The notes below the pieces were generated by a model. It had not been told where the DNA came from. It worked only from the letters and a program-made list of their open reading frames with translations, and did no database searches. The position numbers and the translations under genes are program-made. A stretch of DNA of 64,000 bases, from IMG/VR virus record IMGVR_UViG_3300021964_009390, positions 124,001 through 188,000 of that record; one strand, written 5' to 3'. This document shows, piece after piece, positions 1 through 62,372 of the stretch (positions are counted from its first letter, which is position 1; each line of letters opens with the position of its first letter).

Positions 1-120
1 AAACGAAATACCTTGTTCAAATGAAATTGGTTCATGTATAACCTCAATAGTAGGGTCTAATCGATAGTCCAGCTGCAACGGAGGCATGACCTGTATACCA
101 TCTATTGTGTTTGATTGCAT
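1..120 (-). CDS. 5' part of a late gene (MQSNTIDGIQVMPPLQLDYRLDP...), runs off the left window edge
   Basis: Open frame from ATG at 120 to the window edge; TAAATA at 127-132 lies 6 nt upstream. Confidence 0.6.
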   Translation of the reverse strand, partial: MQSNTIDGIQVMPPLQLDYRLDPTIEVIHEPISFEQGISF

Positions 121-162
121 TACTATTATTTATCGACACATACACTATTCACTACATGTATA

Positions 163-705
163 TCAGTCTATAACTTGTAATGACATGTTTTGTATAGTCG
201 AGTCCGTAAAAGGGTATTGTCTAGATGTAGAGATTGTATATCCAGCCGGGCCTTGTATTATCAAGTCCACTGACCCCACTTTAGTTGGTACTGGTAATTC
301 AAATGTGATTGTGTTATCATTAAACTCATCCCATTGAGGAACAACCACACCAGTGAATTTAGGGTATTCTGTTTTCAACCGATTGGTGTAGTTTTTTTCA
401 AAATAACCGTATTGTTGTTCATTTATGAACATGTCAGGTACACTAGCACTTAAAAATATATTGTTAGTGTCGTACATTCTGTAACCCCTTACATACACTG
501 TTGGTGTTTCTCCAATCCCGACCACCATTTGCTTGGTTGTGTTACTCAAAGAAAACCATGTTATATCTGGTGCGCCCCGAAAGACATCCCCCCGGTTTCC
601 TGAGCGGCTGCCTAAATTATCTTGTTTCACATTGTCAGCGTATTCGTCTAGGGCTTGTTTATCAATAATTTTTGTACGTAGCGTGTTGTTCGGGTCTTTG
701 TTCAT
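163..705 (-). CDS. hypothetical protein, possible IPT/TIG-like beta-sandwich virion protein
   Basis: 180 aa directly after gp15; C-terminal NDNTITFELP..GSVDLIIQGPAG resembles IPT/TIG strands. Confidence 0.45.
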   Translation of the reverse strand: MNKDPNNTLRTKIIDKQALDEYADNVKQDNLGSRSGNRGDVFRGAPDITWFSLSNTTKQMVVGIGETPTVYVRGYRMYDTNNIFLSASVPDMFINEQQYGYFEKNYTNRLKTEYPKFTGVVVPQWDEFNDNTITFELPVPTKVGSVDLIIQGPAGYTISTSRQYPFTDSTIQNMSLQVID

Positions 706-706
706 G

Positions 707-1471
707 TCATTGCGGATTGTCTGGATTATTATTCAGGTTTTTCCAATCAGTCAAACTACCTCCAGTGATATCATCTAGTGACGAAACATTGACGTAGTTT
801 GTTTGGATGTCAAAAATCGTACCGGTGCCTGTCGATCTAGGTTTAGTAAACAACCAGCCTTTTATCGTGAATCCTGTGTTAGCCGATACTCGGTATGCGG
901 AGCTGGCTTGCAAATCTTTCGGGTAATCCATGTTAATGGTACCATTCCACAGCACTTCCGACCGGATTTCTTGTATTGGTGCATCTGGGTCTAGAAATGG
1001 GTCAACACTTTTACTACCTTGCGGTATTTTCCATGATAATATTATGTACGGGTTCGCATAAGGTGCAAAATTAGTAATTATCTGGTCTAAATCAGACTGA
1101 TATTTTGTCATAATGTCCATCGTAACCTCTATATTCACTGGGTTCACCGGAGGTAATTTATCGAATGCATTACTAGCTTCTCGGTGACTGTATCTTTGGG
1201 GGTATGAGAAACCTTCAATTTTGTTAAAAACTCTACCCGGGTCACGCGCGATACTATTCATGGACACGGCGATCACCGGTAATTGAATATGCTGACTCTT
1301 GTTTATAAGGTCGTGTACAACGCGTTGCTTATGCGCGTAAACATATCTCGGTTCAAAAGATTTTGTAGGTTTTCTATCTTTATTGTATCTCTTTACAATT
1401 GTCTCATCAAAAGCTGATAAAAATTGTGTTATTAAATCTTTTACCTCAAAGTTAAATGTATGATATCTCAC
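707..1471 (-). CDS. gp15: tail sheath stabilizer / tail terminator (T4 gp15-like)
   Basis: YHTFNFEVKDLITQFLSAF...YAHKQR...LPVIAVSMNSIARDPGRVFNK...QIITNFAPY...FTIKGWLF pattern; likely start GTG 1471, 5 nt below TAAATA. Confidence 0.8.
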   Translation of the reverse strand: MRYHTFNFEVKDLITQFLSAFDETIVKRYNKDRKPTKSFEPRYVYAHKQRVVHDLINKSQHIQLPVIAVSMNSIARDPGRVFNKIEGFSYPQRYSHREASNAFDKLPPVNPVNIEVTMDIMTKYQSDLDQIITNFAPYANPYIILSWKIPQGSKSVDPFLDPDAPIQEIRSEVLWNGTINMDYPKDLQASSAYRVSANTGFTIKGWLFTKPRSTGTGTIFDIQTNYVNVSSLDDITGGSLTDWKNLNNNPDNPQ

Positions 1472-1482
1472 ATAATTATTTA

Positions 1483-3087
1483 TCAAACAAACCGTTGTAA
1501 GAACCAACCCGGTAGTTTCTCTTTACATTTAGGTAGTACCCTGGATATCATACCGTCTAGTATGTATGTAGTTGAATAATCATCCTTAGATCTTGTACAT
1601 CTACCACAAGACTGTACTAATATATTTAACATTTTATTCTCATACCAGTCTGGGTCGGCTTCTAAAATGGTCTTAACCCGTTTGTCGTTAAACGGTAGAT
1701 AGGGTAGTTTCACTACAATTTGAAATCTGGCTAGATCGTCTTTTAAATCTACACCATGAGTTAGTGATGGTGACATCAATATTGTTGGTTCGTCAGACTG
1801 TTTATGTATGTTGATTATATCTTCATTTGTAACCCCGGGCTCTCTGTATACGAGCCGGTCACATTGAAGCGTTTCATATATAAATTGTGTTATATGATGT
1901 GAATGTGTATGTATCACACCCTTCTCGTCGCCATGATGAGATACTATCTCATTGATATTATCTACTATTTTAGGTAAAAATTTATCTATTGTATTTCTAC
2001 TCAAAGGGTATTTGCTAGAAACATATATTGGGGATTTCGCCGGAGGGAACTCAGACGGTATTTCTATATATTTATAATCTGTGATACCTAATGACTTTGC
2101 GAAGTTTTTGTGGTCCACGATAGTGGCACTCATCAGTAAAATTTTCTCACCGTTATCAAACAGCTGATTAGTTAAAGTGTCTATATGTAAAGGTGTCAGT
2201 CGTACCGTGGTATTGTTTTTTTCTACTATATATTCACAATTGTAAAAGTTGTCTGTACATAGTCGTACCTTGGCTAATAGTCTGTTGATATATGTATATT
2301 TGGATTGAGTTTTACTAGTCCATTTTGATTTTTTTCTCAATTGCTGTTGCAAATACATACGATGGTCATGTAATAAATTGTTCACATCATCTAACCACGA
2401 GTATACCGCCAATGGTTCACTTGACTTGAGTATAGGTAAAGACACCCCGCACCTTTTCGACACGTCATAATCTATAACACATGTGTTATGAGATACAATA
2501 TCGTCTTCTAGTTCGCTAGCTTCATCACATATTAAATATTGCCTTTGCTTGACATGTCCCGGTAGTTGCATATACATTTTATAATTCGTAACACCGTACT
2601 GACTAGTCAACAGTTTGTTTCTATCGTTATGATATGGACATTTACCAGACTCTCGATGCTGTGACAATATATGTCTTGGTATCACAGCAGATTCTATCTC
2701 AACATCCATGCTCGGGTCAATAGTACTCGTGTAGTTGCTTTTACCTTTAAGTGTGTCACATTCGAACAGCGCCACATACTGGTCTTGTAAAGCTTTGGTT
2801 ATTGTCAATGAAATAGCACCATGTGCTTGATCATGCTCGGTATGTATATATTGACCTGTCTGGTCAACCATAAAAGCTCGGTAAGAATTGATGTCCTCGT
2901 ACTTATATTCATCAATCTCTCGTGAGCTCTTCGCGAGGGTACTAGCGAAAAAACTCTTTCCGGAACCGGTCGGAGCATTCAGTATCACCGTATCATTATT
3001 TTTAAATGCAGCCTCTATCTTGTTTAATGTCTTAGACTGCAATGGGGTAGGCTGGTACCCTACCGGAAAGAAATTTAATATAGACAC
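1483..3087 (-). CDS. DinG/Rad3-like SF2 helicase
   Basis: NAPTGSGKS Walker A, DEASELE, SAT, GVDLKDDLARFQIVVKLPY, QSCGRCTRSKDDYSTTYILDG. Confidence 0.85.
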   Translation of the reverse strand: MSILNFFPVGYQPTPLQSKTLNKIEAAFKNNDTVILNAPTGSGKSFFASTLAKSSREIDEYKYEDINSYRAFMVDQTGQYIHTEHDQAHGAISLTITKALQDQYVALFECDTLKGKSNYTSTIDPSMDVEIESAVIPRHILSQHRESGKCPYHNDRNKLLTSQYGVTNYKMYMQLPGHVKQRQYLICDEASELEDDIVSHNTCVIDYDVSKRCGVSLPILKSSEPLAVYSWLDDVNNLLHDHRMYLQQQLRKKSKWTSKTQSKYTYINRLLAKVRLCTDNFYNCEYIVEKNNTTVRLTPLHIDTLTNQLFDNGEKILLMSATIVDHKNFAKSLGITDYKYIEIPSEFPPAKSPIYVSSKYPLSRNTIDKFLPKIVDNINEIVSHHGDEKGVIHTHSHHITQFIYETLQCDRLVYREPGVTNEDIINIHKQSDEPTILMSPSLTHGVDLKDDLARFQIVVKLPYLPFNDKRVKTILEADPDWYENKMLNILVQSCGRCTRSKDDYSTTYILDGMISRVLPKCKEKLPGWFLQRFV

Positions 3088-3093
3088 ATTGGT

Positions 3094-3122
3094 ATTATAT
3101 TAATATTATACTATACTGTCAA
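3094..3122 (-). promoter_or_regulatory. consensus sigma70 promoter TTGACA-17-TATAAT, 6 nt upstream of GTG 3087
   Basis: Exact consensus hexamers with a 17-bp spacer on the minus strand. Confidence 0.85.
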
Positions 3123-4636: not shown

Positions 4637-5229
4637 TTAACTATCGTCTTGGTCGTCGCAAGAAACATATCATCATTAATATGGTAAAACATGTCTATTA
4701 TCTCGCGCATGAATTGACCAACCTGCATGTTGTTCAAATTAGTAGAAAATGCATGGTCTGGAGCACGATCACCCGCGGTTATGTTTATTCCGGTATGACC
4801 TAGTGTCACCCCGGATTTTACATATGTTATACTCACACTACATTTACCTTTAGGCTGACTTACACCGTTCTGCTCATGATCTTGATGTACGATCAGATCA
4901 TCACCATCCACCTCAATAGGGGCATTGTTTAAAAAACGTGAGCTCAACACATTAGCAATTTGTGTATTTAACAACCGTTGATACGCTACAGCCCCAAACG
5001 GGTCAGACAAGCACGGTATCTCCCACAAAAAATTTATCGCATCATCACTATATATGAACTCATTTTTCAATATATCTTCTGTATCAATCATACCATCTGC
5101 CTCTACAATCATTGGAGACCGGAAGGCAATAATGTTACCTATAGGTAATGTTTTTTCTCTAAAAAATTTATACGCGAATCTATCATGCAGCAGCGCACCA
5201 TCATAACACTCAATATCATTAATTATCAT
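4633..5229 (-). CDS. DUF366 family protein (lipoate/biotin ligase-like fold)
   Basis: YDG..L...FAY...IIAFRSPM...D.ED...I.SDD..NF..E...AVAYQRL...DGDDL...K.SVSI...HTGINI. Confidence 0.7.
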   Translation of the reverse strand: MIINDIECYDGALLHDRFAYKFFREKTLPIGNIIAFRSPMIVEADGMIDTEDILKNEFIYSDDAINFLWEIPCLSDPFGAVAYQRLLNTQIANVLSSRFLNNAPIEVDGDDLIVHQDHEQNGVSQPKGKCSVSITYVKSGVTLGHTGINITAGDRAPDHAFSTNLNNMQVGQFMREIIDMFYHINDDMFLATTKTIVK

Positions 5230-5236
5230 ACGATAT

Positions 5237-5265
5237 ATTATAGTATATTAAATCGTAGTTTTCAA
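5237..5265 (-). promoter_or_regulatory. sigma70-type promoter TTGAAA-17-TATAAT, 7 nt upstream of ATG 5229
   Basis: Read directly from the sequence. Confidence 0.75.
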
Positions 5266-10394: not shown

Positions 10395-11305
10395 TTAACA
10401 ATTTTTTTTCCATAGTATCGAACTATGTCTCCACGTATATCTTTAGGTATCTTATATACACCTTCCGGAGGTGTTTGTGATTCGGGTGTGACATTAAATA
10501 TACTATATAAACCACTACCTATAGATATCTTATCAACATCTCCAACCACTCTATCGGCTAGTACTGGTGCATTACCACCACAAGCAAATATAACAACATC
10601 ATAATTTTTAACAACACTATTTATTTCCTCCGCTATACGAGATACAGTTTCCATGTGGTTTTTATCTGGTCCAGTGTTACCAAAACATGAGGGGTATTCT
10701 ATATACCCTAGATCCGATATATTATATAGGTTGTTATCTACATAGCTATCGTAACAGGCTTTACCCATGTTGCTTACAATTAATACTCGATTATTACTGA
10801 GAGCGCGTTTACATATTTTCTGTGATTCATCAAACCATGTGTTTATATCGTTTATTATAGGTTCAAAAATCTTAAAGTCTTGTTTTACCATTGGAATAAT
10901 ACCTTTTGACCAATTCCAATTACCTAGATGTGTTGATATATAGCATTTACTATATTCATCGCTGAATTTATCCATATGTTCCTGTAAACCTATACCTTGA
11001 TGTAGTAATAATAAAGAAAAGGTTGAGTTTGCTAGTGCAGTCTTGTAGCTATCCACCCATTGATCTAACACCGGTGAATCAATAATTTTTTCTAGACCAA
11101 TTTCACTCTCTCGGTGGATATCTATTGTACTGTCGTAGAGACCAGCAGTATTGTACAACCACCGGCAAGACCATTTCATATCCTTCCACGGTGAATACAT
11201 ATGCTTTATACTATCAATTTCACCTATAGTCTTTAAATGATGTACATACAATAAGCAGCCTTCGCTACACCCTGCTCTGTAATAACTGTAGTTACTATTG
11301 CGCAT
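10391..11305 (-). CDS. hypothetical glycan-related protein
   Basis: 304 aa; YDVVIFACGG.A..L...ISIGSGL resembles GT-associated domains; TAAATA 6 nt upstream. Confidence 0.5.
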   Translation of the reverse strand: MRNSNYSYYRAGCSEGCLLYVHHLKTIGEIDSIKHMYSPWKDMKWSCRWLYNTAGLYDSTIDIHRESEIGLEKIIDSPVLDQWVDSYKTALANSTFSLLLLHQGIGLQEHMDKFSDEYSKCYISTHLGNWNWSKGIIPMVKQDFKIFEPIINDINTWFDESQKICKRALSNNRVLIVSNMGKACYDSYVDNNLYNISDLGYIEYPSCFGNTGPDKNHMETVSRIAEEINSVVKNYDVVIFACGGNAPVLADRVVGDVDKISIGSGLYSIFNVTPESQTPPEGVYKIPKDIRGDIVRYYGKKIVK

Positions 11306-11335
11306 TATTTCTATTTACTCTAATAGTTAATTTAA

Positions 11336-14868: not shown

Positions 14869-14896
14869 CTGAATTATTTATTTATGTAGTTGAATA

Positions 14897-44162: not shown

Positions 44163-44224
44163 ACAAATTGTAAAAATATTGAATATATGTGGATTTTTGT
44201 CATATAATATTATATCATATATAC

Positions 44225-47101: not shown

Positions 47102-47104
47102 AGC

Positions 47105-47133
47105 TTGAATTATTTATGTTAGTATACTATAAT
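47105..47133 (+). promoter_or_regulatory. sigma70-type promoter TTGAAT-17-TATAAT, 5 nt upstream of queC; spacer contains the minus-strand TAAATA
   Basis: Read directly from the sequence. Confidence 0.8.
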
Positions 47134-47138
47134 TATGT

Positions 47139-49226: not shown

Positions 49227-49240
49227 CAATACCTTATAAT
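49212..49240 (+). promoter_or_regulatory. sigma70-type promoter TTGTAT-17-TATAAT, 6 nt upstream of the helicase ATG
   Basis: Read directly from the sequence. Confidence 0.75.
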
Positions 49241-49246
49241 ACTCAC

Positions 49247-50569
49247 ATGATAGGTATAGACGAGCAGTTATTTGAGCACGTGCTCATATACAACTGTATG
49301 ACAGATGAAAGGTATCTAGCTAGTGTGATAGATTATCTCAAACCGGAGCATATCAAAGACTCTAACATTAAGCAGACATACAATTTGTTAGTAGACTTTT
49401 ACAATGATCACAGTGAGTTACCAAGCTCTACAGAAATTAAAACACGTTGTGATAATGACGATTTAAAAGCCGCAGTCCGGATCACTGTGAGTTACATCAA
49501 GAATATCGATAAAAACTATAATAAAGATGAATTGTATAAAAACACAGAACAGTTCATTAAGGAACGTGCAGTGTATAGTACCTTGATGGAGGTTGTAGAT
49601 CAAGGCTCTTCCGGGAGTTTAGAGCCGGCAGATCTATTAACTAAATTTGAATCTGCATGTAACATTAATTTGAATGTTGATGTAGGTGTAAATTATTTTG
49701 AAGATATCGACCGGCATGTAGACGATATAAATAGAGAAGAGAAGTACGTGAGTACCGGTTGGCAATGGCTTGATAAAAAACTCAATGGGGGTTTTGTAGA
49801 AACTGGCCGGGCATTGTATGTTTTCGCTGGAGAGACTAATGTAGGTAAAAGTATATTGCTAGGTAATATAGCTACTAACTTATGTAAGCAGGGTAAAAAT
49901 GTGTTGTTAGTTTCATTAGAAATGTCAGAGATGCTATACTCTAAGAGGTTGAGCTCAAACATAGCACAGGTACCTATAAATGAGACTCATTTAAGTGTAG
50001 AATATTTGAAAGAATCTATTAAAAATTTTAAGAACACTCACAAAGATTGTTCTTTGATCGTCAAAGAGTTTCCTCCTAGTACCGTGACACCTCAACAACT
50101 AACAGCATATATTAATAAGTTATGCCAAACAGTGATGCGCCCAGACGCAATAGTACTAGATTATATCAACCTGTTGAAAGGTCCACCTGGTACAAACAGT
50201 TATGAACAAATTAAAAAGGTAACTGAGAATGTAAGAGCCATGTCATATAAATTTGAATGCCCGGTCATCACCGCAACTCAGTTAAACCGTTCTGGTTACA
50301 ACGAGACTGACCCGGGATTGGATACAGTCGGAGAAAGTTATGGTATGGGAGCAACAGCAGATTGTGTGGTGAGTATATGGCAGCGAGATGAAGATGCTGA
50401 ATTGAATGTAATCAATTTAGGTATGATGAAAAACCGGTTCGGTCCTAACTTCGGTACATGTGCGATGGATATAGACTATGGTACTTTGACAGTCACAGAA
50501 CAAGAAAACGTGAACGAAACAGAACAGATGAATGAAACTATCGGTACCCTATCTATATTGAGCAATTAA
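49247..50569 (+). CDS. gp41: replicative DnaB-like helicase gp41
   Basis: GETNVGKS, SLEM, VKEFP, DYINL, TATQLNR, ESYG..ATAD, KNRFG. Confidence 0.95.
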   Translation: MIGIDEQLFEHVLIYNCMTDERYLASVIDYLKPEHIKDSNIKQTYNLLVDFYNDHSELPSSTEIKTRCDNDDLKAAVRITVSYIKNIDKNYNKDELYKNTEQFIKERAVYSTLMEVVDQGSSGSLEPADLLTKFESACNINLNVDVGVNYFEDIDRHVDDINREEKYVSTGWQWLDKKLNGGFVETGRALYVFAGETNVGKSILLGNIATNLCKQGKNVLLVSLEMSEMLYSKRLSSNIAQVPINETHLSVEYLKESIKNFKNTHKDCSLIVKEFPPSTVTPQQLTAYINKLCQTVMRPDAIVLDYINLLKGPPGTNSYEQIKKVTENVRAMSYKFECPVITATQLNRSGYNETDPGLDTVGESYGMGATADCVVSIWQRDEDAELNVINLGMMKNRFGPNFGTCAMDIDYGTLTVTEQENVNETEQMNETIGTLSILSN

Positions 50570-52201: not shown

Positions 52202-52497
52202 TGAACATGTATAGAGACAGTACAGTCGATCCGGTGCAGTCTCTGTATGATAAGGATTTAGAACATACATTTTATAGTTTTTGCAGTTTTGTATGTATGT
52301 CAACAAACAAAAAACAAAACATAGCTAATATATTTTTATATGTATTGGAGAATCAAGAAATTTTAAACCTATACATGGAACTAGGAGACCACTCAACAAA
52401 GTATGACGCCATCCGGAGTTTTTTAACTATTGAACCATCTTTACAAAAAAGCAAATATATAAAAAGATATATAAACAAAAACGTTGAAACAAATTAA
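52201..52497 (+). CDS. hypothetical protein
   Basis: ORF coupled to the DHH stop. Confidence 0.6.
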   Translation: MNMYRDSTVDPVQSLYDKDLEHTFYSFCSFVCMSTNKKQNIANIFLYVLENQEILNLYMELGDHSTKYDAIRSFLTIEPSLQKSKYIKRYINKNVETN

Positions 52498-52512
52498 ACA
52501 ATATACTATAAT
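52484..52512 (+). promoter_or_regulatory. sigma70-type promoter TTGAAA-17-TATAAT, 14 nt upstream of the gp32 ATG
   Basis: Read directly from the sequence. Confidence 0.75.
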
Positions 52513-52526
52513 AAGAAAATAAAATT

Positions 52527-53414
52527 ATGAGCACATTCACAACAAGCATGTTCGATTCTATCAAAGAATCACTTTCGAAAGCACCATCATCCGGATTCAA
52601 GGATGTTTTAAGATTCAAACCAGGTACCTCGTGTGAGTTGAGGCTGTTACCTAATGTAAAAAAACCTCAAAATACATTTTACCATTACTACACATATGGC
52701 TGGGAAAGCTTCGCAACTGGTCAATATATAAATGTGGTGTCACCGCAAACTGTAGGAGAACGATGCCCAGTATCAGAGGCACGTTATCAACTCCGGCAAC
52801 GAGGCGGTGCTGAAGAGCAAGAAAAATCCAGCAAGGTTTTGAGGAGAGAGCAATGGCTAGTCAACACATATGTTATAAGTCACAATGAAGAACCAGAAAA
52901 CAATGACAGTGTAAAAATCTTAAGATACGGTAAACAATTACACAAGATTATAACTGATGCAATTGAAGGAGAAGATGCAGACCAATTTGGTGCTAAAGTA
53001 TTTGATCTGTCTGATGAAGGGTGTACTTTTCGAGTAAAATGCGACAAACAAGGTGATTTTCCAACATATGTCGCTAGTAAATTTTTGATTCCTGGATCAA
53101 TCGCCGGACTGGCCCCAGCAGATCATGAAAAAATATATGAACAGGTACATGAACTTGACGATGTGTTTCCTATAAAATCGTATGATGAAATACAAGAAAT
53201 TGTAGATGAACATTTGTACTGCCGGAGTACAACTTCAGTCACTGTAGCGACAGAGTCAGTGTCAAAAACAACAAGTGATACAGACACTGACCTTGATGAA
53301 GATGTCCCTATGGACTTTCCGGAAAAAGAGACACCGAAACAGTCTAAAAAGAAAGAACCGGAAGTTGATATAGACATACCAGATGATTTGTTAGAAGGTT
53401 TGGATGATCTGTAA
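52527..53414 (+). CDS. gp32: single-stranded DNA-binding protein gp32
   Basis: RLLP, CPV, N.YV, KILRYGKQL..II, FD...G.TF, Y.S.F; acidic tail DDLLEGLDDL. Confidence 0.85.
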   Translation: MSTFTTSMFDSIKESLSKAPSSGFKDVLRFKPGTSCELRLLPNVKKPQNTFYHYYTYGWESFATGQYINVVSPQTVGERCPVSEARYQLRQRGGAEEQEKSSKVLRREQWLVNTYVISHNEEPENNDSVKILRYGKQLHKIITDAIEGEDADQFGAKVFDLSDEGCTFRVKCDKQGDFPTYVASKFLIPGSIAGLAPADHEKIYEQVHELDDVFPIKSYDEIQEIVDEHLYCRSTTSVTVATESVSKTTSDTDTDLDEDVPMDFPEKETPKQSKKKEPEVDIDIPDDLLEGLDDL

Positions 53415-54800: not shown

Positions 54801-55160
54801 ATGAAAGTAAGAAACAATTTGTACACCCCTAGTTATTTCATGAAACGTATGAAAGACAATGGTTATGGTATATGGAAAGTGTTTGACAAATACGGTCCAC
54901 ACGACAGCAGATACTGGACCATGTTGATCGACCCTGGAGGGTTCTCGGTATGGGTCACATGTTATTTTAATAAAGAGGAGTTGAATGATGTGTATTTTGA
55001 ACTGGACGATGGTGGTAACCGAATACCTAAAAAATTGCTGATAAAAACCGCTAGTATTGAAACAATAATATCCAATTTAATGAAATTTGGTATAGATAAT
55101 GAGACAAAGTTTGATTCTTCTATTATGGATATAAATAATCTCAATGACGCGAGAAAATAA
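54801..55160 (+). CDS. hypothetical protein
   Basis: 119-aa ORF. Confidence 0.65.
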   Translation: MKVRNNLYTPSYFMKRMKDNGYGIWKVFDKYGPHDSRYWTMLIDPGGFSVWVTCYFNKEELNDVYFELDDGGNRIPKKLLIKTASIETIISNLMKFGIDNETKFDSSIMDINNLNDARK

Positions 55161-56456: not shown

Positions 56457-56701
56457 AAATTCACCCCGGTCAGCTGTATGCCGTAACCGCAGGTGACTAT
56501 TTTGGTTGTAATATAGTGTGTATCAACGTACACAATAATAGTGTCATGTTTTTGGAGTTAAACGAGATGAAAAACATGGATATAGACAAGTCAGATGTAA
56601 CATCTGGAGTGGCTCACGGTGTTTTAGAGTTGCTAGATACACTACCAGACGATATAATGGATACATGTATAAAGCAATATGAAAAAAACACTAATAATTG
56701 A
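56441..56701 (+). CDS. hypothetical protein
   Basis: 86-aa coupled ORF. Confidence 0.55.
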   Translation: MANKVKIHPGQLYAVTAGDYFGCNIVCINVHNNSVMFLELNEMKNMDIDKSDVTSGVAHGVLELLDTLPDDIMDTCIKQYEKNTNN

Positions 56702-57590
56702 CAGTAATAATTTACTTTACAGAATATTTTACATGAACCGGGCCCGAGGTACCGATGTAAACACCTTGCTTGTGTTTCTACGATGCTTGAAATCATATGT
56801 TGATTTAATTGATGGTGCAGACAATATCATCGCAGTGTGGGACAGCCGGTTATGTCGAGGTGAACCAAACTTTCGCCGCGTTTCCAAGCAAGCTGATTAC
56901 AAAGGGAACCGAAACCATGACGGTCTAGAAGAAGCTCATGCATATGATGAGCAGATACAGCAATGTGTAGAGGCGTTGGGTGGAATCAACATGTTTCCTA
57001 GACGTATGGAAGCCGACGATGTTATAGCGTGGATAGCTCATAACAATCCGGACGAAAAAATTACTATTGTGTCCGTAGACCAGGACATGTACCAACTCAT
57101 AACAGACAATGTGTCAGTGTATACACCAATTAAAAAAGTTATTGTGAACAATAACAATTTTGAACAAATCACCGGTGTTACGAAAGATAATTTTATAAAA
57201 TATAAGGCACTCATAGGAGACAAATCTGACAACATCCCTGGTGTCCCTAGAGTGGGTAAAAAAACCGCGCAAAAATTGATAACAGAAGGTATTGAAAACA
57301 AGCTATCTGAAGAGAATTTAAAGATATATCATAAAAATATAGAGTTGATGGATCTCGCGCATGGTTACACAGTACATGATCACGAAATTGAAAGCTATCA
57401 AGAACAATTTTCACATATAAATGACAACCACCCGGATAAAACTAAATTCAAACAATTATGCATACATAACGCGGTGTATGCGATATCTAACGACATTGAC
57501 AATTGGTTTTCAACATTCTCTACACCACAAAACAATGTACCAAACGTCGTGAGCATGATCAATAGCTTGAATCTACATAAAAATACATAA
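56679..57590 (+). CDS. rnh: RNase H / 5'-3' exonuclease (T4 rnh-like)
   Basis: IDSNN, YKGNR, EADD, S.DQD..QL, GDKSDNIPGV..VG.KTA. Confidence 0.9.
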   Translation: MKKTLIIDSNNLLYRIFYMNRARGTDVNTLLVFLRCLKSYVDLIDGADNIIAVWDSRLCRGEPNFRRVSKQADYKGNRNHDGLEEAHAYDEQIQQCVEALGGINMFPRRMEADDVIAWIAHNNPDEKITIVSVDQDMYQLITDNVSVYTPIKKVIVNNNNFEQITGVTKDNFIKYKALIGDKSDNIPGVPRVGKKTAQKLITEGIENKLSEENLKIYHKNIELMDLAHGYTVHDHEIESYQEQFSHINDNHPDKTKFKQLCIHNAVYAISNDIDNWFSTFSTPQNNVPNVVSMINSLNLHKNT

Positions 57591-57600
57591 ATAACTTTAC

Positions 57601-57798
57601 ATGAGCGACGAAATAAAATATACTGACAGGGTAGAACCTCGAATGATCGCGTCACCGTATGATGGTAACACTGTGAAACCAAAATTGATCACTAAAGTGA
57701 TGAATGGTTATCAAATTACAGAAGCCCATTGGCATTGCCCGACTACTGGTAGATTCATTCAAAAAGGCACTGTTGAGATTAAAAAAATAAAAAAATAA
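57601..57798 (+). CDS. small late protein
   Basis: 65 aa; TAAATA 7 nt upstream. Confidence 0.65.
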   Translation: MSDEIKYTDRVEPRMIASPYDGNTVKPKLITKVMNGYQITEAHWHCPTTGRFIQKGTVEIKKIKK

Positions 57799-57806: not shown

Positions 57807-57835
57807 TTGCCAGGTAATATGTTGTAAGCTATAAT
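57807..57835 (+). promoter_or_regulatory. sigma70-type promoter TTGCCA-17-TATAAT, 6 nt upstream of the primase ATG
   Basis: Read directly from the sequence. Confidence 0.8.
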
Positions 57836-57841
57836 TCAACT

Positions 57842-58891
57842 ATGTTGAGTTTGTCTGATCAGTATGTTGTAGAGAAGTTTTGCCAATATGGTGGCTATCC
57901 ATCATTCAACAAACGATCAAACGCATGGATGGCTGGGTGCCCTATGTGTAGGGAAGGGAAGAGCTGGGGTAAGAAGCGGAGGTTGTACTACAAAATTGAC
58001 AAAAACTATTTATTTTGTTTCAATTGCGGGTGGAAAGGAGGGACAATCGAGTTTATAAAACATGTGACTGGTATGTCATTCAATGAGATAATGAATGAAA
58101 ACAACAACTATGATACGTCTGATGTTGTAGAAGTAGATTCAAAGAAACCATCTATCACCACCCCTAGCGAGACACTACCAGCTGATTCAATAAATTTATT
58201 CGACGATTCACAAACCAGCTGGTGGCTATCACAGCGGTCTGAAGATAGTAAAGTCATCCACGATTGTATAGATTATATAAAGACGCGAAAACTAAATGTG
58301 GCCATAAACAAACCAATGTCAATATGGGTCAGCTTGAGCGATTATACACATAAAAACAGACTGACATTGCCGTTCTATTCAACAGATGGAAAAATTATAT
58401 TCTATCAAACCAGAGCCATGTATAAAGATGAATCCAAGCCCAAGTATTTGAGTAAATCCGGAAGCGAAAAGAGTATTTTTAATATAAACAATATCGTGTC
58501 AGATGTTGACAACATATATTTATTTGAAGGACCAATAGATAGCTGTTTTGTCAAAAATGGTGTAGCAGTTGCCGGTGTTACAAATGGCCCGAGCCAAGAT
58601 TTGAACAGCTTGCAGCAGCAACAATTGAACGATTATAGATTGTATGGTAAAACTTGGGTGCTAGATTCACAATGGTTGGATGACACCAGTTTGCATAAGA
58701 CAAAAATGTTAGCAGATCAAGGTGAGCATGTGTTCATATGGCCTGAATCTATTGGTAGATCGTATAAGGATTTAAATGATTTGTGTACGAACAAAAATTT
58801 ACCAGGTATAGGTCACAAATTTGTAGACAGACACACCTACACGGGTATGAAAGCCAAGCTGATGCTCAAGACGATCAGCTCTAGTCGTTAG
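57842..58891 (+). CDS. gp61: DNA primase gp61
   Basis: CPMC...CFNCG Zn finger, KY, EGPIDS, KDLND. Confidence 0.92.
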   Translation: MLSLSDQYVVEKFCQYGGYPSFNKRSNAWMAGCPMCREGKSWGKKRRLYYKIDKNYLFCFNCGWKGGTIEFIKHVTGMSFNEIMNENNNYDTSDVVEVDSKKPSITTPSETLPADSINLFDDSQTSWWLSQRSEDSKVIHDCIDYIKTRKLNVAINKPMSIWVSLSDYTHKNRLTLPFYSTDGKIIFYQTRAMYKDESKPKYLSKSGSEKSIFNINNIVSDVDNIYLFEGPIDSCFVKNGVAVAGVTNGPSQDLNSLQQQQLNDYRLYGKTWVLDSQWLDDTSLHKTKMLADQGEHVFIWPESIGRSYKDLNDLCTNKNLPGIGHKFVDRHTYTGMKAKLMLKTISSSR

Positions 58892-59303
58892 AAATTAAAT
58901 AGCTTTTGAGACTCTCTGATAAGCTTCTCAAATCTTGAGCGATTCTACCAATTTTCTTAGTTTCACTCCGGGCAATATCGTCAAATATGGTGTCACATGG
59001 AGCATTGTTTATTTGAGAGTTGAGAGAACTCTCACCTAATCCGTTCAAATAATCTATAAATTCTTCAATCTTAACAACCCATCCTTCGATTTGACCAGCG
59101 TATTCAGCGTTTTGTTGTTTTTGCAACTCCTCCGCAGGGTTACCTCCAGGACTTGCCATCGGCGCGCCTTCAGGTGCCGGCTCTACATCTAACATCGATG
59201 GGTCCGTACCAGGGTCCATTTGATTTTGTGCTGCATCTGCATCAGTCAATTCTTCCTGTTCTGTAACTAATGTTGTAAAAAATCGGTCAGTAAATGTTTT
59301 CAT
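58881..59303 (-). CDS. acidic late protein, CTS-like N-terminus
   Basis: MKTFTDRFFTTLVTE; TATAAATA 9 nt upstream. Confidence 0.7.
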   Translation of the reverse strand: MKTFTDRFFTTLVTEQEELTDADAAQNQMDPGTDPSMLDVEPAPEGAPMASPGGNPAEELQKQQNAEYAGQIEGWVVKIEEFIDYLNGLGESSLNSQINNAPCDTIFDDIARSETKKIGRIAQDLRSLSESLKSYLISND

Positions 59304-59312
59304 ATTGATAAT

Positions 59313-59334
59313 TATTTATACTCCGATATAAATA
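59313..59334. promoter_or_regulatory. back-to-back late-type TATAAATA promoters
   Basis: TAAATA at 59313-18 (-) and 59329-34 (+), 9 and 7 nt before the divergent ATGs. Confidence 0.7.
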
Positions 59335-59341
59335 TAAACAG

Positions 59342-59737
59342 ATGAAACATTCAAAAAATAACGATCAACAAGAAAAACAAACACTTTTCGAAGATTTAGT
59401 ACAACAAGCAAACCAATATCAGGCCGGTGCTCATCCGATGGGGCGAGTACCAGGTAGTAAAAAATTGACCGTTCTTGATTTGTTGAGAGTGAACGACGAA
59501 GATGATGACAAAGCACCGCAAATATTACCATTCCAAATGAACACATTTGTAGAGGCTCTTGGTGATGTGTATGTACAACTAGTGGAAGTACAGAAAATGG
59601 TGGCTAGTGCATATAAATCGAGTGTTGTTAAGGACACAAACAAAATAAAAAATACACTCGTCACAATTAATAAAAACATACAGAAACAAAAACAAATGGT
59701 CAAAGAATGTGGTAAATTAATAGATAAAATAAATTAA
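59342..59737 (+). CDS. hypothetical late protein
   Basis: 131 aa, coiled-coil C-terminus. Confidence 0.65.
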   Translation: MKHSKNNDQQEKQTLFEDLVQQANQYQAGAHPMGRVPGSKKLTVLDLLRVNDEDDDKAPQILPFQMNTFVEALGDVYVQLVEVQKMVASAYKSSVVKDTNKIKNTLVTINKNIQKQKQMVKECGKLIDKIN

Positions 59738-59772
59738 GTTGCCACATTCGAGTATATATTTAAATATATTAT

Positions 59773-60222
59773 ATGCTTGATATATTAAAATCTTTGATGA
59801 TAGTGTGTATTGTGTCATCTGCAATTGCATCTGTGTGCAATATGGTGTACGGTATATCACCGTACGGTGTGTTTGTCATAGCTACAATAATACAATTTGC
59901 TTCTAGCTGGTTCATGTCTACATACTTTACATACAAGGATAAACTGGCGAACACTCAGAGACAAACCGCATTGATTTCTCAAATTGAGTCTGAAGCTACA
60001 GAAGCTCCTTGCGCTTACTGTGGTACAGTCAACTTAATACCCATCGCGCCAGACGGGGACAATGATTTCAAATGCATCGGATGCGGGGAGACTAACGGTG
60101 TTTATGTAAATGTAACCGTGGCTCAAAAGTCAGTACCTCTGGATTCCCCCAGTTATTCTGTATCCAATTTCGACTCACATTTGGAAACCGCCAAAAGATC
60201 GATACAAAACAGTGACTCATGA
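59773..60222 (+). CDS. membrane protein with Zn ribbon
   Basis: Two N-terminal TM helices, CAYC...CIGC; TAAATA 6 nt upstream. Confidence 0.65.
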   Translation: MLDILKSLMIVCIVSSAIASVCNMVYGISPYGVFVIATIIQFASSWFMSTYFTYKDKLANTQRQTALISQIESEATEAPCAYCGTVNLIPIAPDGDNDFKCIGCGETNGVYVNVTVAQKSVPLDSPSYSVSNFDSHLETAKRSIQNSDS

Positions 60223-60611
60223 AAAATATTGAAGCTGATGGAAAATCTAGTAGCAAGTTTCCACCCGTCGGTGAGAAACATAAAGTAACTACCACCCGAG
60301 ATATACAAAATATAAACAATAATTTCTGGAATGAACAAAGTGTAGATTTACATTTGTGTTACAAAAAAGGTACAGCATATGCCAACAACAGTAACAAAAA
60401 ATCATCCATCAATTTAATTACAGAGTTGCTAGAATTGTTGAAACATCAATATAAGGAATCTACAACACAACCGGATATAATAGACATTATTTTTAATAAC
60501 ATAAAAAACGACATGACTATATTGGAAAAAATCACCGACGATGTTGACAAAAATTGTATATTGGCTACAATACAAGGATACACTTTGGGGTGTTTAAAAA
60601 AATATGAATAA
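60219..60611 (+). CDS. hypothetical protein
   Basis: Coupled ORF. Confidence 0.6.
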   Translation: MKNIEADGKSSSKFPPVGEKHKVTTTRDIQNINNNFWNEQSVDLHLCYKKGTAYANNSNKKSSINLITELLELLKHQYKESTTQPDIIDIIFNNIKNDMTILEKITDDVDKNCILATIQGYTLGCLKKYE

Positions 60612-60867
60612 AGAAAATTACGGAGACACGTTTGAATTAAAAAATGGTGAAGAAGTTGAAATGAACCAAGATGAAGTGGCGAGATGGTGTTGTTTGATAG
60701 AGGCTATAGATGTGGTGAGCAAGAAAGGAACGCAAGTAGGGATGGACATGACTAAATCCTCATGGATAAAGCCAATAGCTTTTCAGAAATACATAGACGA
60801 GAGAATGGATACTATGGTAGAAGAGATACAACGAGATAAAGATAATCACCAAATAAATATTTACTGA
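60604..60867 (+). CDS. hypothetical protein
   Basis: Coupled ORF. Confidence 0.6.
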   Translation: MNKENYGDTFELKNGEEVEMNQDEVARWCCLIEAIDVVSKKGTQVGMDMTKSSWIKPIAFQKYIDERMDTMVEEIQRDKDNHQINIY

Positions 60868-61226
60868 TGTTATACATAGTAGGTACACAAGTAGACACTA
60901 GAAATACACAACAACCAACTGGTCAGCTAGTGAACCGGAATGCGCGTCGAAAGGTGACGTGGCTTCCACCAGACGATATCTGGGAACTAGCCTCAATCCG
61001 CCGGTCTAGAGAAACAAACGATGTAGAGTATAGCTTCATGTCATGGAAAACAAAAGAATTCAAAACAGTACCATTCCCGGACTGTGGAGCTGCTGATCAG
61101 GCAATTGCATCCGCACGTAACGAGCAAATTGTTGATGACGATGATAGGTCCAAGGTGGATATGGAAGAGAAGACTAGTCACTTAAATGATATTCTCAACC
61201 CAAAACCAAAACAAAGAGGTCAATAG
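60867..61226 (+). CDS. hypothetical protein
   Basis: Coupled ORF; TAAATA 7 nt upstream. Confidence 0.6.
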   Translation: MLYIVGTQVDTRNTQQPTGQLVNRNARRKVTWLPPDDIWELASIRRSRETNDVEYSFMSWKTKEFKTVPFPDCGAADQAIASARNEQIVDDDDRSKVDMEEKTSHLNDILNPKPKQRGQ

Positions 61227-62008
61227 TAATCACCATATACTGCATCCCCTCCCCCGTAATCACCGTAGTCAAATATATCATTAGATGTAATTGTAGACCA
61301 AGTGTCTGTGTTTTGTAGATACGGATCATATATACTATCTTCAGTCACTTGTGTACTACCACCCTCCGGAGTGATATTATTCTCGAAACTAAAATCGAAA
61401 CGTTTGGCTTTCAATAACCATATGTAATGCCCCATCAACGGGTTAATCTTTTGAATGTCTTGATCTAACCGTTCTGTTATTTCATATACACTACCATCTC
61501 GAGGAAACACTCGATCATTACCATATTCCGACAATCGAAAAATATCTCCGGATTTAGGCTCAATAACACCTTGCTTCGCGTCACCAGTACCACCCATATT
61601 AGAATAAAACGTGTCTATGTGTATATATGCAGTTACTTCATCATCACTATTGATACCAAACTGACTCAACGTTAGAGCATTTTCATTCAACTCTATATAC
61701 ATAATCATTTTAATCGGGTCACCAAATGTTTGGTCTGAATCCTCACCGTACAATGGATCGTAATTGCCTAGATCATCACTAGCGGATTGATATAAAATTT
61801 CAGTACCATACATGCAAATCTGCTCTTTAAACCATTTGCTATAATTACCACGTTCATTGGCTGTGTTATTTTTATCTAGAAACCTGGCGCAACCGTTGTT
61901 AAATTTAAACACATTGTCTAAGGGAACCACTCCGGAACCTATGTCTATACAGTCCGGTTTTTTGGTTACAAACGGTTTGGGACAAAATTCATCTGGGTAG
62001 TTGCTCAT
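61220..62008 (-). CDS. gp14: neck protein (T4 gp14-like)
   Basis: EQI.MYG...Y...DPLYGED...F......MYI...LSQFGI...DE......P..GD...YEI. Confidence 0.7.
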   Translation of the reverse strand: MSNYPDEFCPKPFVTKKPDCIDIGSGVVPLDNVFKFNNGCARFLDKNNTANERGNYSKWFKEQICMYGTEILYQSASDDLGNYDPLYGEDSDQTFGDPIKMIMYIELNENALTLSQFGINSDDEVTAYIHIDTFYSNMGGTGDAKQGVIEPKSGDIFRLSEYGNDRVFPRDGSVYEITERLDQDIQKINPLMGHYIWLLKAKRFDFSFENNITPEGGSTQVTEDSIYDPYLQNTDTWSTITSNDIFDYGDYGGGDAVYGDYY

Positions 62009-62358
62009 GCTCGCTGCAATACAAAATTATTAATGGTATCGTCCCAGTACATACGTATACCAGTTTTACCTAACATGCGTGGAGATTTTGTAGTGATGTT
62101 TCTGATATTATACTTGTTCTGGATGTATTTTAGGTCTTGTTCACCTACCGGTATTTTTTCAAAAGAATCTGAGTTTCTGAGCCGCTCGATTTTAGGGTTC
62201 AATGTAGGATCCACGCGATCTCTATCCGGCACTAGATTTTGACTACCTTGCCGCCATGGAGTGGCACCCATCCGCGCCGACTGTTGTCGGGTGGTGGTTT
62301 TACCAACAACCTGCTTCGCAGTGTTGAAATACGTTTCGAATAATGTGTCAAACTTCAC
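62005..62358 (-). CDS. small late protein, CTS-like N-terminus
   Basis: MKFDTLFE; TAAATA 7 nt upstream of GTG. Confidence 0.65.
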   Translation of the reverse strand: MKFDTLFETYFNTAKQVVGKTTTRQQSARMGATPWRQGSQNLVPDRDRVDPTLNPKIERLRNSDSFEKIPVGEQDLKYIQNKYNIRNITTKSPRMLGKTGIRMYWDDTINNFVLQRA

Positions 62359-62372
62359 TTACTATTATTTAA

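What the first reader, a model, noticed from the sequence alone, without database searches (positions are those of the whole stretch)
120..62371. Apparently leaderless transcriptome: both promoter classes fire at the start codon
Seen: sigma70-like -35/-10 pairs with 17-bp spacers end 5-8 nt before the starts at 3087, 5229, 24525, 28277, 34918, 41556, 44225, 47139, 49247 and 57842. TAAATA (core of the T4 late TATAAATA) lies 5-9 nt before the starts at 120, 1471, 11305, 14868, 19991, 21261, 22503, 23001, 28219, 31283, 33551, 34648, 41295, 47101, 55144, 57601, 59303, 59342, 59773, 60867 and 62358. No AGGAG-type Shine-Dalgarno is visible before these starts, and most other genes are coupled by overlapping or near-adjacent stop/start codons. 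Known: transcription starts about 6-8 nt below a -10 element, whereas T4 uses leadered SD mRNAs. Inference: the TSS falls at or within a few nt of the AUG/GUG, so both early and late programs would use leaderless mRNA plus translational coupling. This constrains the host and might let the phage disable SD-dependent host translation. The motifs also sort genes into early (replication, deazaguanine) and late (virion, glycan, cargo) classes.
Basis: partly seen in the sequence, partly recalled or inferred. Interest (0 to 1): 0.78.

Follow-up and report, generated by a model that had tools for sequence, protein, structure and literature searches.

The report
Promoters abutting start codons, marine phage
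In this uncultured 222-kb marine T4-like phage, about 40% of genes have a promoter ending 5-7 bases before the start codon, so their mRNAs probably have no leader and no ribosome-binding site; this design was known from Thermus phage phiYS40 but was not found reported for T4-type phages.

Summary
All 10 sigma70-type and all 21 TAAATA-type sites sit 5-9 nt before ATG/GTG. TTG-N20-TATAAT-N6-RTG occurs 7 times against 0.09 expected. 16 of 43 ATAAATA sites lie 5-9 nt before a gene start, against 0 of 29 in T4. Shine-Dalgarno (SD) pairing is below background in the window (5% of genes; T4 57%, HTVC008M 51% with the same pipeline). The geometry is kept in IMG/VR relatives down to 35-50% protein identity and in 65 kb of the same genome outside the window. 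The box-to-start spacing equals the known box-to-TSS spacing of sigma70 and T4 gp55 promoters, and a gp55 homologue is encoded. The best reading is therefore leaderless mRNAs for first genes, plus SD-free stop/start coupling for downstream genes. No RNA data could be found, so transcription start sites are inferred.

Outside the window the same genome has clear SD-led genes: tail sheath, tail tube and a cassette of small early genes. The transcriptome is therefore mixed, the host ribosome uses SD, and "disabling SD translation" is contradicted. The host remains unknown. This is a new variant of a known kind (phiYS40, Deinococcus/Actinobacteria "-10 next to ORF").

The parts
3085..3122 (-). sigma70-type promoter TTGACA-N17-TATAAT-N6-GTG; DinG/Rad3-like helicase
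   Evidence: Pfam
5227..5265 (-). TTGAAA-N17-TATAAT-N7-ATG; DUF366 protein
24523..24560 (-). TTGAAT-N17-TATAAT-N6-ATG; QueD, then QueE coupled at 23813
28242..28279 (+). TTGAAT-N17-TATAAT-N6-ATG; GTP cyclohydrolase I (FolE)
34135..34174 (-). TTGCAA-N16-TATAAT-N9-ATG; 184-aa ORF. Conserved in L006.
34881..34920 (+). TGGATT-N17-TATAAT-N8-ATG; UvsY, followed by coupled UvsW, gp55, gp47 and gp46
36673..37188 (+). gp55 homologue (late promoter recognition protein). The start is uncertain, 36673 or 36715.
   Evidence: 40% identity to HTVC008M late sigma factor; weak Sigma70_r2 hit
41521..41558 (+). TTGATA-N17-TATAAT-N6-GTG; DNA polymerase gp43. The geometry is kept in nearly all of the 22 relatives.
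44190..44227 (+). TGGATT-N17-TATCAT-N6-ATG; 143-aa ORF upstream of UvsX. Weak hexamers, but conserved in relatives.
47105..47141 (+). TTGAAT-N17-TATAAT-N5-ATG; QueC, then an amidotransferase. It lies 37 nt from the divergent late start at 47101.
49212..49249 (+). TTGTAT-N17-TATAAT-N6-ATG; gp41 helicase
52484..52529 (+). TTGAAA-N17-TATAAT-N14-ATG; gp32. This is the exception, with a short A-rich leader. Its distance varies from 6 to 27 nt in relatives.
56630..56682 (+). TTGCTA-N17-TATAAT-N6-ATG opening a 5-codon mini-ORF. Its TGA overlaps the ATG (56679) of the 5'-3' exonuclease gene.
57807..57844 (+). TTGCCA-N17-TATAAT-N6-ATG; gp61 primase
118..134 (-). late box GATAAATA-N6-ATG; 1384-aa protein running off the window
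1469..1484 (-). late box GATAAATA-N5-GTG; gp15-like tail sheath stabiliser. JGI's gene call uses the same start.
11303..11319 (-). late box AGTAAATA-N6-ATG; glycan-cluster operon
14866..14882 (-). late box AATAAATA-N6-ATG; 871-aa GT2 glycosyltransferase
19978..19993 (+). late box TATAAATA-N5-ATG. The TAA inside the box is the stop codon of the upstream gene.
21259..21275 (-). late box TATAAATA-N6-ATG
22501..22519 (-). late box AATAAATA-N8-ATG
22999..23014 (-). late box TATAAATA-N5-ATG
28217..28233 (-). late box CATAAATA-N6-ATG; operon containing the 551-aa high-codon-bias protein. It lies 57 nt from the divergent early start at 28277.
31281..31296 (-). late box CATAAATA-N5-ATG; DUF6267 protein
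33549..33564 (-). late box CATAAATA-N5-ATG; 89-aa protein. Conserved in L006.
34646..34661 (-). late box TGTAAATA-N5-ATG; RusA-like resolvase. The box is kept at 4-6 nt in six relatives.
41282..41297 (+). late box TATAAATA-N5-ATG
47099..47118 (-). late box CATAAATA-N9-ATG; 463-aa high-codon-bias protein. The distance is 5 nt in the orthologues of L008 and L022.
55130..55146 (+). late box TATAAATA-N6-ATG
57586..57603 (+). late box CATAAATA-N7-ATG
59301..59344 (.). two back-to-back late boxes (TATAAATA on each strand) filling the 38-nt gap between divergent starts 59303(-) and 59342(+)
59759..59775 (+). late box TTTAAATA-N6-ATG
60852..60869 (+). late box AATAAATA-N7-ATG
62356..62373 (-). late box ATTAAATA-N7-GTG; operon containing the gp14-like head-closure protein
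16615..16637 (.). divergent starts 16617(-) and 16635(+) only 17 nt apart. The gap holds one-mismatch late boxes (ATAAGTA and ATAATTA) 7-8 nt from each ATG.
   Evidence: read directly

Best explanation
The window belongs to an uncultured estuarine/marine jumbo phage (contig of 222 kb). It has T4-type replication, recombination, packaging and tail genes. Its core genes are organised in very compact units with three features.

1. The first gene of each unit has its promoter directly against the start codon. The promoter is either a host sigma70-type promoter (TTGnnn-N17-TATAAT, then about 6 nt) or a T4-type late promoter (nATAAATA, then 5-7 nt) read by the phage's gp55 homologue.
2. These box-to-start distances equal the normal distance from the box to the transcription start. 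The mRNA would therefore begin at, or 0-3 nt before, the A or G of AUG/GUG. It would be leaderless, with no Shine-Dalgarno (SD) site, and would be initiated through its 5'-terminal start codon.
3. Downstream genes in each unit lack SD and start within -8 to +10 nt of the preceding stop (ATGA, TAATG and similar). They would be translated by termination-reinitiation.

A minority of genes in the same genome use ordinary leaders with SD: tail sheath, tail tube and a cassette of small early genes. The system is therefore mixed.

Shown: the geometry, its statistics, its conservation, the absence of SD, the functional sorting of the two promoter classes, and the presence of gp55. Inferred: the transcription start sites, leaderless initiation and reinitiation.
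For: Geometry and chance:
- The exact early pattern occurs 7 times against 0.09 expected.
- The distance histogram peaks at 6 nt for sigma70-type sites and at 5-7 nt for ATAAATA. T4 has 0 of 29 ATAAATA sites at 4-9 nt and 15 at 10-60 nt.
- Spacing matches known biology. The sigma70 -10 hexamer occupies -12 to -7 (my knowledge). The T4 late box starts at -13 and lies about one helical turn upstream of the TSS (PMC2988020).
- GeneMarkS-2 treats a Pribnow box 6-8 nt from starts as the signature of leaderless transcription (PMC6028130). The same arrangement was tested experimentally in Deinococcus (PMC12340547).

SD and start codons:
- SD pairing is depleted. 5% of window genes pass the threshold, against 14% of internal controls, 57% in T4 and 51% in HTVC008M.
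- None of the 11 early-type sites and 1 of the 21 late-type sites has SD-like pairing.
- Start codons at promoter-adjacent genes are 28 ATG, 4 GTG and 0 TTG. This fits a purine +1 and 5'-AUG/GUG initiation.

Conservation and replication:
- In 22 relatives the DNA polymerase upstream region keeps TTGAC-N17-TATAAT-N6-ATG/GTG, while the spacer sequence diverges and GTG and ATG interchange. Similar conservation holds for UvsY, QueC, orf44225, RusA and orf47101.
- In the independent part of the same genome, 32 of 78 genes (41%) are of this type. Controls give 1 of 54 in T4, 2 of 65 in HTVC008M and 0 of 20 in Syn9. Relatives give 11-42%.

Other support:
- Divergent starts lie only 17-57 nt apart, which leaves no room for leaders.
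- JGI and ENA gene calls independently use the same starts.
- A gp55 homologue is encoded.
- Early-type boxes precede replication and deazaguanine genes. Late-type boxes precede gp15-, gp14-, baseplate- and tube-like genes.
Against: - No transcript 5' end was seen. No RNA run was listed, and the metagenome scan found only a sister DNA contig.
- The loosely defined sigma70 consensus is at background frequency.
- Five of the 21 late boxes contain the stop codon of the upstream gene, so part of the motif there could be junction sequence.
- Some sites have d=8-9, which would leave a 3-4-nt leader.
- The gp55 homologue is distant from T4's, so its box-to-TSS distance could differ by a base or two.
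- SD-led genes elsewhere in the genome show that leaderless initiation is not forced on the phage.
- Folding energy of the first 36 nt does not distinguish promoter-adjacent genes from coupled genes.
Confidence: 0.75

Rival explanations
1. The A/T-rich boxes are not promoters at these positions. Instead they are SD-independent translation enhancers (S1-type A/U-rich ribosome landing sites) inside long polycistronic mRNAs that start far upstream.
For: - The window has no SD, so some other initiation signal is needed.
- Several late boxes lie inside operons, only 7-10 nt after the previous stop.
- The loose promoter consensus is not enriched.
Against: - The early class carries a -35 element at a fixed 17-bp spacing, which an RNA element would not need (7 found against 0.09 expected).
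- Two different boxes sort with replication genes and virion genes.
- The late box equals the T4 gp55 box, and gp55 is encoded.
- The 37 coupled genes lack the box, so it is not a general ribosome site.
- Divergent pairs 17-57 nt apart have no upstream transcript to sit in.
Confidence: 0.1
2. The promoters are real, but the adjacent ATG/GTG are not the true starts. Translation would begin further downstream, so the first part of the annotated ORF serves as a leader.
For: - Start codons were chosen by ORF logic only.
- Six of the promoter-adjacent starts are not the longest-ORF start.
Against: - The DNA polymerase N-terminus (MYRN) is conserved from the first codon in relatives, with ATG and GTG interchanging at that position.
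- JGI and ENA callers pick the same starts.
- No SD is found further in.
- The sharp 5-7-nt peak would be unexplained.
Confidence: 0.07
3. The pattern is a compositional artefact: AT-rich junctions plus TAA stop codons in a 98%-coding genome.
For: - TAAATA-N5-7-RTG is only 2-fold over shuffles in raw count.
- Five late boxes include the upstream stop.
Against: - Eighteen of the 23 matches are at gene starts.
- Sixteen of the 21 late boxes are independent of any stop codon.
- T4 and HTVC008M have similar GC content and show 0-3%.
- The geometry is conserved across diverged relatives.
Confidence: 0.02

Closest known systems
Thermus thermophilus phage phiYS40 (leaderless middle/late mRNAs)
   Same: A large lytic myovirus that makes most middle/late transcripts without a leader and relies on the host to translate them (review PMC3594737).
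   Different: - phiYS40 infects a host phylum where leaderless genes are the norm, and it is not T4-like.
- In phiYS40 the leaderless class is middle/late. Here both the sigma70-type (early) and gp55-type (late) classes are built this way.
- phiYS40's start sites were mapped. Here they are inferred.
- The reported IF2-up/IF3-down shift could not be examined.
Bacterial '-10 box adjacent to ORF' genes (Deinococcus-Thermus, Actinobacteria; GeneMarkS-2 group C)
   Same: A Pribnow box ends 6-8 nt before AUG/GUG, there is no SD, and a -35 is optional (PMC12340547, PMC6028130, PMC4007540).
   Different: - In group C genomes, genes internal to operons use SD sites. In this window they use SD-free stop/start coupling instead.
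- A second, phage-specific promoter class is used in the same way.
T4 late promoters (TATAAATA, gp55/gp33/gp45)
   Same: - The same box: 7 of 21 sites are exact, and the rest vary at the first one or two positions.
- No -35 conservation.
- Either strand is used.
- They precede virion genes.
- A gp55 homologue is present.
   Different: In T4 the box lies 10-60 nt before the start and the leader carries SD (control). Here the box lies 5-7 nt before the start.
Kyanoviridae (cyanomyoviruses, Pelagibacter phage HTVC008M)
   Same: They are the nearest cultured relatives: DNA polymerase is about 31% identical and DUF6267 37% identical. Gene order gp55-gp47-gp46 is shared. They are marine.
   Different: HTVC008M has SD on 51-54% of genes, and only 2 of 65 are promoter-adjacent. 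Syn9 has 0 of 20.
Lambda cI mRNA from PRM
   Same: A classic leaderless phage mRNA that starts at the AUG (my knowledge; cited in PMC12340547).
   Different: It is a single regulatory gene, not a genome-wide design.

Membership tests
Leaderless (5'-AUG) bacterial genes | -10 element ending about 6-8 nt upstream of the start codon | tested here: met
   The distance histogram peaks at 6 nt. The exact pattern occurs 7 times against 0.09 expected.
Leaderless (5'-AUG) bacterial genes | Primary transcript 5' end at, or within about 5 nt of, the start codon | not testable with these tools
   No RNA run was listed. The metagenome scan gave only a DNA contig.
Leaderless (5'-AUG) bacterial genes | No SD before the start; start codon AUG or GUG | tested here: met
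   0 of 11 early-type and 1 of 21 late-type sites have SD-like pairing. Start codons are 28 ATG, 4 GTG and 0 TTG.
Leaderless (5'-AUG) bacterial genes | Translation actually initiated on the 5'-terminal codon | not testable with these tools
   This needs a reporter assay, ribosome profiling or N-terminal proteomics.
T4-type late transcription | 8-bp TATAAATA box at the -10 position without a -35 element | tested here: met
   All 21 window sites have TAAATA; 7 are TATAAATA and 5 CATAAATA. There is no information content upstream of the box.
T4-type late transcription | Phage-encoded gp55 | tested here: met
   Window 36673-37188 is 40% identical to the annotated late sigma factor of HTVC008M. There is a weak Sigma70_r2 hit.
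T4-type late transcription | gp33 co-activator and gp45 sliding clamp | tested here: inconclusive
   A gp44-like clamp loader was seen at L113:12482-13408. No gp45 or gp33 was recognised among the proteins scanned. About 78 kb of the genome was not read.
T4-type late transcription | Boxes precede virion genes | tested here: met
   They precede gp15-like, gp14-like, T4_baseplate, gp25-like and tail-tube-like genes.
sigma70 (housekeeping) promoters | TTGACA-like -35, spacer of 17 +/- 1 bp, TATAAT-like -10 | tested here: met
   The -35 is weak at 34918 and 44225.
T4-like phages (Straboviridae/Kyanoviridae sensu lato) | Core set gp43, gp41, gp61, gp32, gp46/47, UvsW/X/Y, gp55, gp17, gp14, gp15, sheath, tube, baseplate | tested here: met
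   Identity to cultured members is only about 25-40%, so this is a separate, uncultured lineage.
phiYS40-like translational takeover | Shift of host IF2/IF3 levels favouring leaderless mRNA | not testable with these tools
   The host is unknown. No translation-factor gene was seen in the roughly 144 kb read.

The most novel reading that the evidence does not exclude
A whole uncultured clade of marine jumbo T4-type phages runs its core early and late genes through 5'-AUG (leaderless) initiation plus SD-free reinitiation. Its gp55-type late promoters would have been moved so that +1 falls on the start codon. If so, either an abundant marine host lineage has unusually leaderless-proficient ribosomes, or the phage carries a factor that biases initiation toward 5'-terminal start codons. 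In either case SD leaders would be kept only for a few very abundant proteins.
Probability: 0.2. Interest if true: 0.8.

Novelty: new variant of a known kind. Interest (0 to 1): 0.6.

Why it matters
- T4-type phages are the textbook case of leadered, SD-driven and translationally regulated mRNAs. A sister lineage that places both host-type and gp55-type promoters directly on the start codon would show that this gene-expression design is evolvable within the superfamily.
- It would extend phage leaderless expression from thermophile phages to abundant marine viruses.
- It affects gene calling. Start choice should use the promoter box, as GeneMarkS-2 does for group C genomes.
- It gives a sequence-only way to define early and late regulons in uncultured phages.
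- It gives a testable constraint on the unknown host: canonical sigma70 promoter recognition, a functional anti-SD, and efficient leaderless initiation.

Tried and rejected
- RNA evidence. The look-up of sequencing runs with kind rna listed none. With kind any it listed only DNA runs from estuary and marine samples. Read laying was therefore not used. An exact-match scan of metagenome contigs with a 30-mer just inside the 28219 operon found only a sister DNA contig.
- Host.
  - A genome-contig scan with the GDP-mannose dehydratase gave 62-70% hits across many phyla and was uninformative.
  - Atlas searches of two ORFs from GC-rich islands gave only chance-level hits.
  - No tRNA was found in 129 kb. 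Two were found further left. The tRNA-Met(CAT) has a G1:C72 pair and lacks the three G:C pairs next to the anticodon loop, so it is not an initiator.
  - A Bacteroidota host was considered because of the lack of SD. It was rejected because the early promoters are canonical TTGACA/TATAAT rather than TTTG/TAnnTTTG (my knowledge) and because SD-led genes exist.
- Rfam found no family in the window, so no riboswitch leaders.
- The loose sigma70 scan is not enriched.
- 5'-end folding energy does not separate the gene classes.
- The phiYS40 primary paper (PMC1885378) is not held, so a review was cited instead.

Full report
**What the window is.**
- The 64-kb window is part of IMG/VR contig IMGVR_UViG_3300021964_009390, also known as JGI Ga0222719_10000014 (222,461 bp), from an estuary metagenome. 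Near-identical contigs of 228.7 and 230.0 kb exist in other samples.
- GC content is 37% and the window is 98% coding.
- It encodes T4-type core proteins: gp43 DNA polymerase, gp41, gp61, gp32, gp46/gp47, UvsW/X/Y, a gp55 homologue, TerL, and gp14- and gp15-like proteins. It also encodes a 7-deazaguanine set (FolE, QueD, QueE, QueC and an amidotransferase) and glycan genes.
- The DNA polymerase is only about 31% identical to any cultured phage, with cyanomyoviruses closest. This is an uncultured lineage. Twenty-two related loci at 45-86% polymerase identity were fetched from IMG/VR.

**Checking the observation.**
- All ten sigma70-type sites have a 17-bp spacer and a -10 hexamer ending 5-8 nt before ATG/GTG, and seven of them end at exactly 6 nt.
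- Two have a weak -35 (TGGATT at 34918 and 44225), and 44225 has TATCAT.
- All 21 TAAATA sites are 5-9 nt before the start. Seven are the exact T4 box TATAAATA and five are CATAAATA.
- I found further sites: 34137 (d=9), gp32 at 52527 (d=14), and 56630-56667. At 56630-56667 a perfect promoter abuts a 5-codon mini-ORF whose TGA overlaps the ATG of the 5'-3' exonuclease gene.

**Is it more than chance?**
- TTG-N20-TATAAT-N6-RTG occurs 7 times against 0.09 +/- 0.29 in 100 dinucleotide shuffles.
- TAAATA-N5-7-RTG occurs 23 times against 11.5 +/- 3.8, and 18 of the 23 are called gene starts.
- Starting from the motif rather than the gene, 16 of 43 ATAAATA sites have a gene start 5-9 nt downstream (counts of 6, 4 and 3 at d = 5, 6 and 7), and only 6 have one at 10-60 nt.
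- Eight of 12 TTG-N20-TATAAT sites have a start at 5-7 nt.
- Against a uniform spread over 0-60 nt, p is 3e-12 for the late class and 1e-6 for the early class.
- Letter permutations of the late motif give 8% against 37%.
- A loosely defined sigma70 consensus is not enriched at all (76 found, 79.7 expected). The signal is positional, and that is the point of the finding.

**Controls.**
- The same scripts were run on 50 kb each of T4, Pelagibacter phage HTVC008M and cyanophage Syn9.
- T4 has 0 of 29 ATAAATA sites at 4-9 nt and 15 at 10-60 nt (Fisher test against the window, 6e-6).
- With a rule that assigns each gene to promoter-adjacent, SD, coupled-only or none, the promoter-adjacent share is 1 of 54 in T4, 2 of 65 in HTVC008M and 0 of 20 in Syn9. 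In the window it is 29 of 82.

**Shine-Dalgarno (SD).**
- I measured duplex energy of positions -20 to -2 against the anti-SD sequence.
- 5% of window genes reach -4.4 kcal/mol or lower (mean -0.80). Internal in-frame start-like codons give 14% (mean -2.01). T4 gives 57% and HTVC008M 51%.
- By class, SD-like pairing occurs at 0 of 11 early sites, 1 of 21 late sites and 3 of 37 coupled genes.
- Thirty-seven starts lie -8 to +10 nt from the upstream stop, mostly as ATGA, TAATG or gaps of 1-6 nt. Their upstream regions are A-rich with no motif.

**Independent replication.**
- Using look-up of encoding contigs I read the same genome outside the window and merged 128.8 kb.
- In the 78 genes outside the window, 32 (41%) are promoter-adjacent (11 early-type, 21 late-type). 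They include T4_baseplate, gp25-like and tail-tube-like genes.
For example, the gp15-like protein of 254 aa starts at GTG 1471.
- In relatives the share is 11-42%.
- Orthologue by orthologue, the DNA polymerase upstream region keeps TTGAC-N17-TATAAT-N6-(A/G)TG in nearly all of the 22 relatives, while the spacer letters differ and GTG and ATG interchange in front of a conserved MYRN N-terminus.
- UvsY, QueC, orf44225, RusA and orf47101 behave the same way.
- gp41 has its own promoter only in the closest relative examined (L004) and is otherwise coupled to the preceding gene.
- gp32 is the exception, with an A-rich leader of variable length.

**How it most likely works.**
- A sigma70 -10 hexamer occupies -12 to -7 (my knowledge), so six bases after it comes +1.
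- The T4 late box begins at -13 and sits one helical turn upstream of the start (PMC2988020), so five bases after it comes +1.
- The observed modes of 6 and 5-7 nt therefore put +1 on the A or G of the start codon, or one to two bases before it.
- A gp55 homologue is encoded.
- The boxes sort by function as T4 biology predicts.
- Divergent starts only 17, 36, 37, 38 and 57 nt apart (16617/16635, 34881/34918, 47101/47139, 59303/59342, 28219/28277) leave no room for leaders.
- A -10 box 6-8 nt from the start is the accepted genomic signature of leaderless transcription (PMC6028130). It has been validated experimentally in Deinococcus (PMC12340547; PMC4007540).
- I conclude, with about 0.75 confidence, that these first genes are made from leaderless or near-leaderless mRNAs, and that downstream genes are translated by SD-free termination-reinitiation. 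The start sites, the initiation mode and the reinitiation are inferences.

- Outside the window the same genome has unmistakable SD leaders:
  - tail sheath (CTAAATA, 3 nt, AGGAAGG, 10 nt, ATG);
  - tail tube (CTAAATA, 4 nt, AGGAG, 9 nt, ATG);
  - a late gene with AGGAGG;
  - small early genes with AAGGAGG or AAAGGAAA;
  - six early genes sharing a leader of about 25 nt (ATAATCAGA-AAC-AAAGGA) behind a TACAAT/CATAAT -10.
- About 11% of the 160 genes are classed as SD-led.
- The host ribosome therefore uses SD, and major late proteins depend on it. The idea that the phage could switch off SD-dependent translation is contradicted, and "leaderless transcriptome" applies to the core genes, not to everything.

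**Host.**
- Canonical -35/-10 promoters and working SD argue against Bacteroidota (the promoter consensus for that phylum is from my knowledge).
- HTVC008M's SD usage argues against a simple SAR11-like pattern.
- Nothing positively identifies the host.

**Comparison with what is known.**
- The nearest precedent is Thermus phage phiYS40. Its middle and late mRNAs are mostly leaderless, and it is reported to raise IF2 and lower IF3 (PMC3594737).
- Other phages with start-site maps differ. phiKZ has no leaderless transcript (PMC8244752). AR9 has 26-491-nt UTRs (PMC5312081).
- Full-text searches for leaderless together with cyanophage, T4-like or late promoter found no report of this design in T4-type or marine phages. 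That is an absence within this library only.
- I rate it a new variant of a known kind: the same principle as phiYS40 and group C bacteria, but applied to gp55-type late promoters as well as sigma70-type ones, combined with SD-free coupling, and found in an uncultured marine jumbo-phage clade.

Noticed in passing
L115:3600-9700 (same genome, contig about 80.8-86.9 kb): Six small early genes (starts 3693, 4443, 7157, 7455, 9618, 11683) share a conserved leader of about 25 nt, ATAATCAGA-AAC-AAAGGA, behind a GTTGCAG-N17-TACAAT/TATCAT promoter. This is a leadered cassette, carrying the AAAGGA SD in four of the six, that contrasts with the leaderless core genes.
   Followed up: partly
L114:2900-4131: Four small genes have promoters with an extended, nearly identical upstream element, AAAAGTTGTCC(A/T)TT, then N17-TATAAT-like-N6-ATG. 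Genes led by AAGGAGG or AAAGGAAA sites are interleaved with them.
   Followed up: partly
L109:2184-5583 (equivalent to about 3-6 kb beyond the window's right end): The tail sheath and one tail tube gene use the variant late box CTAAATA, followed by a leader of about 17 nt that begins at an AGGAAGG or AGGAG SD. A second tube-like gene (L109:5638-6213) is of the leaderless type (TATAAATA-N5-ATG).
   Followed up: partly
window 56630-56682: A perfect early promoter abuts a 5-codon mini-ORF (MYKAI). Its TGA overlaps the ATG of the 5'-3' exonuclease gene. This may be a leaderless upstream ORF used to deliver ribosomes by reinitiation.
   Followed up: partly
window 52484-52529 and orthologues in L004, L007, L008, L016, L022, L023: gp32 is the one replication gene that keeps an A-rich leader. 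The distance from -10 to ATG is 14 nt in the window and 6-27 nt in relatives. This recalls T4 gp32 autoregulation on its own leader.
   Followed up: partly
window 19978-19985, 22512-22519, 23007-23014, 31289-31296, 57586-57593: The TAA inside the late box doubles as the stop codon of the upstream gene, so promoter, stop and start are packed into about 16 nt.
   Followed up: yes
L114:1-2500 and 4500-6500: There are islands of 50-55% GC inside a 37% GC genome. They hold small ORFs without recognisable relatives, which may be recently acquired DNA.
   Followed up: partly
L115:1707-1782 and 3109-3184: tRNA-Met(CAT) and tRNA-Thr(TGT) genes. The Met tRNA has a G1:C72 pair, so it is an elongator or Ile2 type, not an initiator.
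   Followed up: yes
L114:6567-13756: A cluster of four sulfotransferase-domain genes, an APS kinase and a Glyco_transf_90 gene suggests synthesis of a sulfated glycan. It sits next to the window's GDP-mannose dehydratase, epimerase and glycosyltransferase genes (window 5272-19982).
   Followed up: no
L114:1905-2123: A 72-aa protein with only a Sigma70 region 4 domain. It could be a transcription modulator.
   Followed up: no
window 23010-24525, 28277-28921, 47139-48522: The 7-deazaguanine pathway genes (QueD, QueE, FolE, QueC and a glutamine amidotransferase) are split over three separate early-promoter units. No transglycosylase was identified among the proteins scanned.
   Followed up: no
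window 16615-16637: Divergent genes start 17 nt apart. The gap is an imperfect inverted repeat (ACATAA...TTATGT) that carries a one-mismatch late box for each direction.
   Followed up: partly
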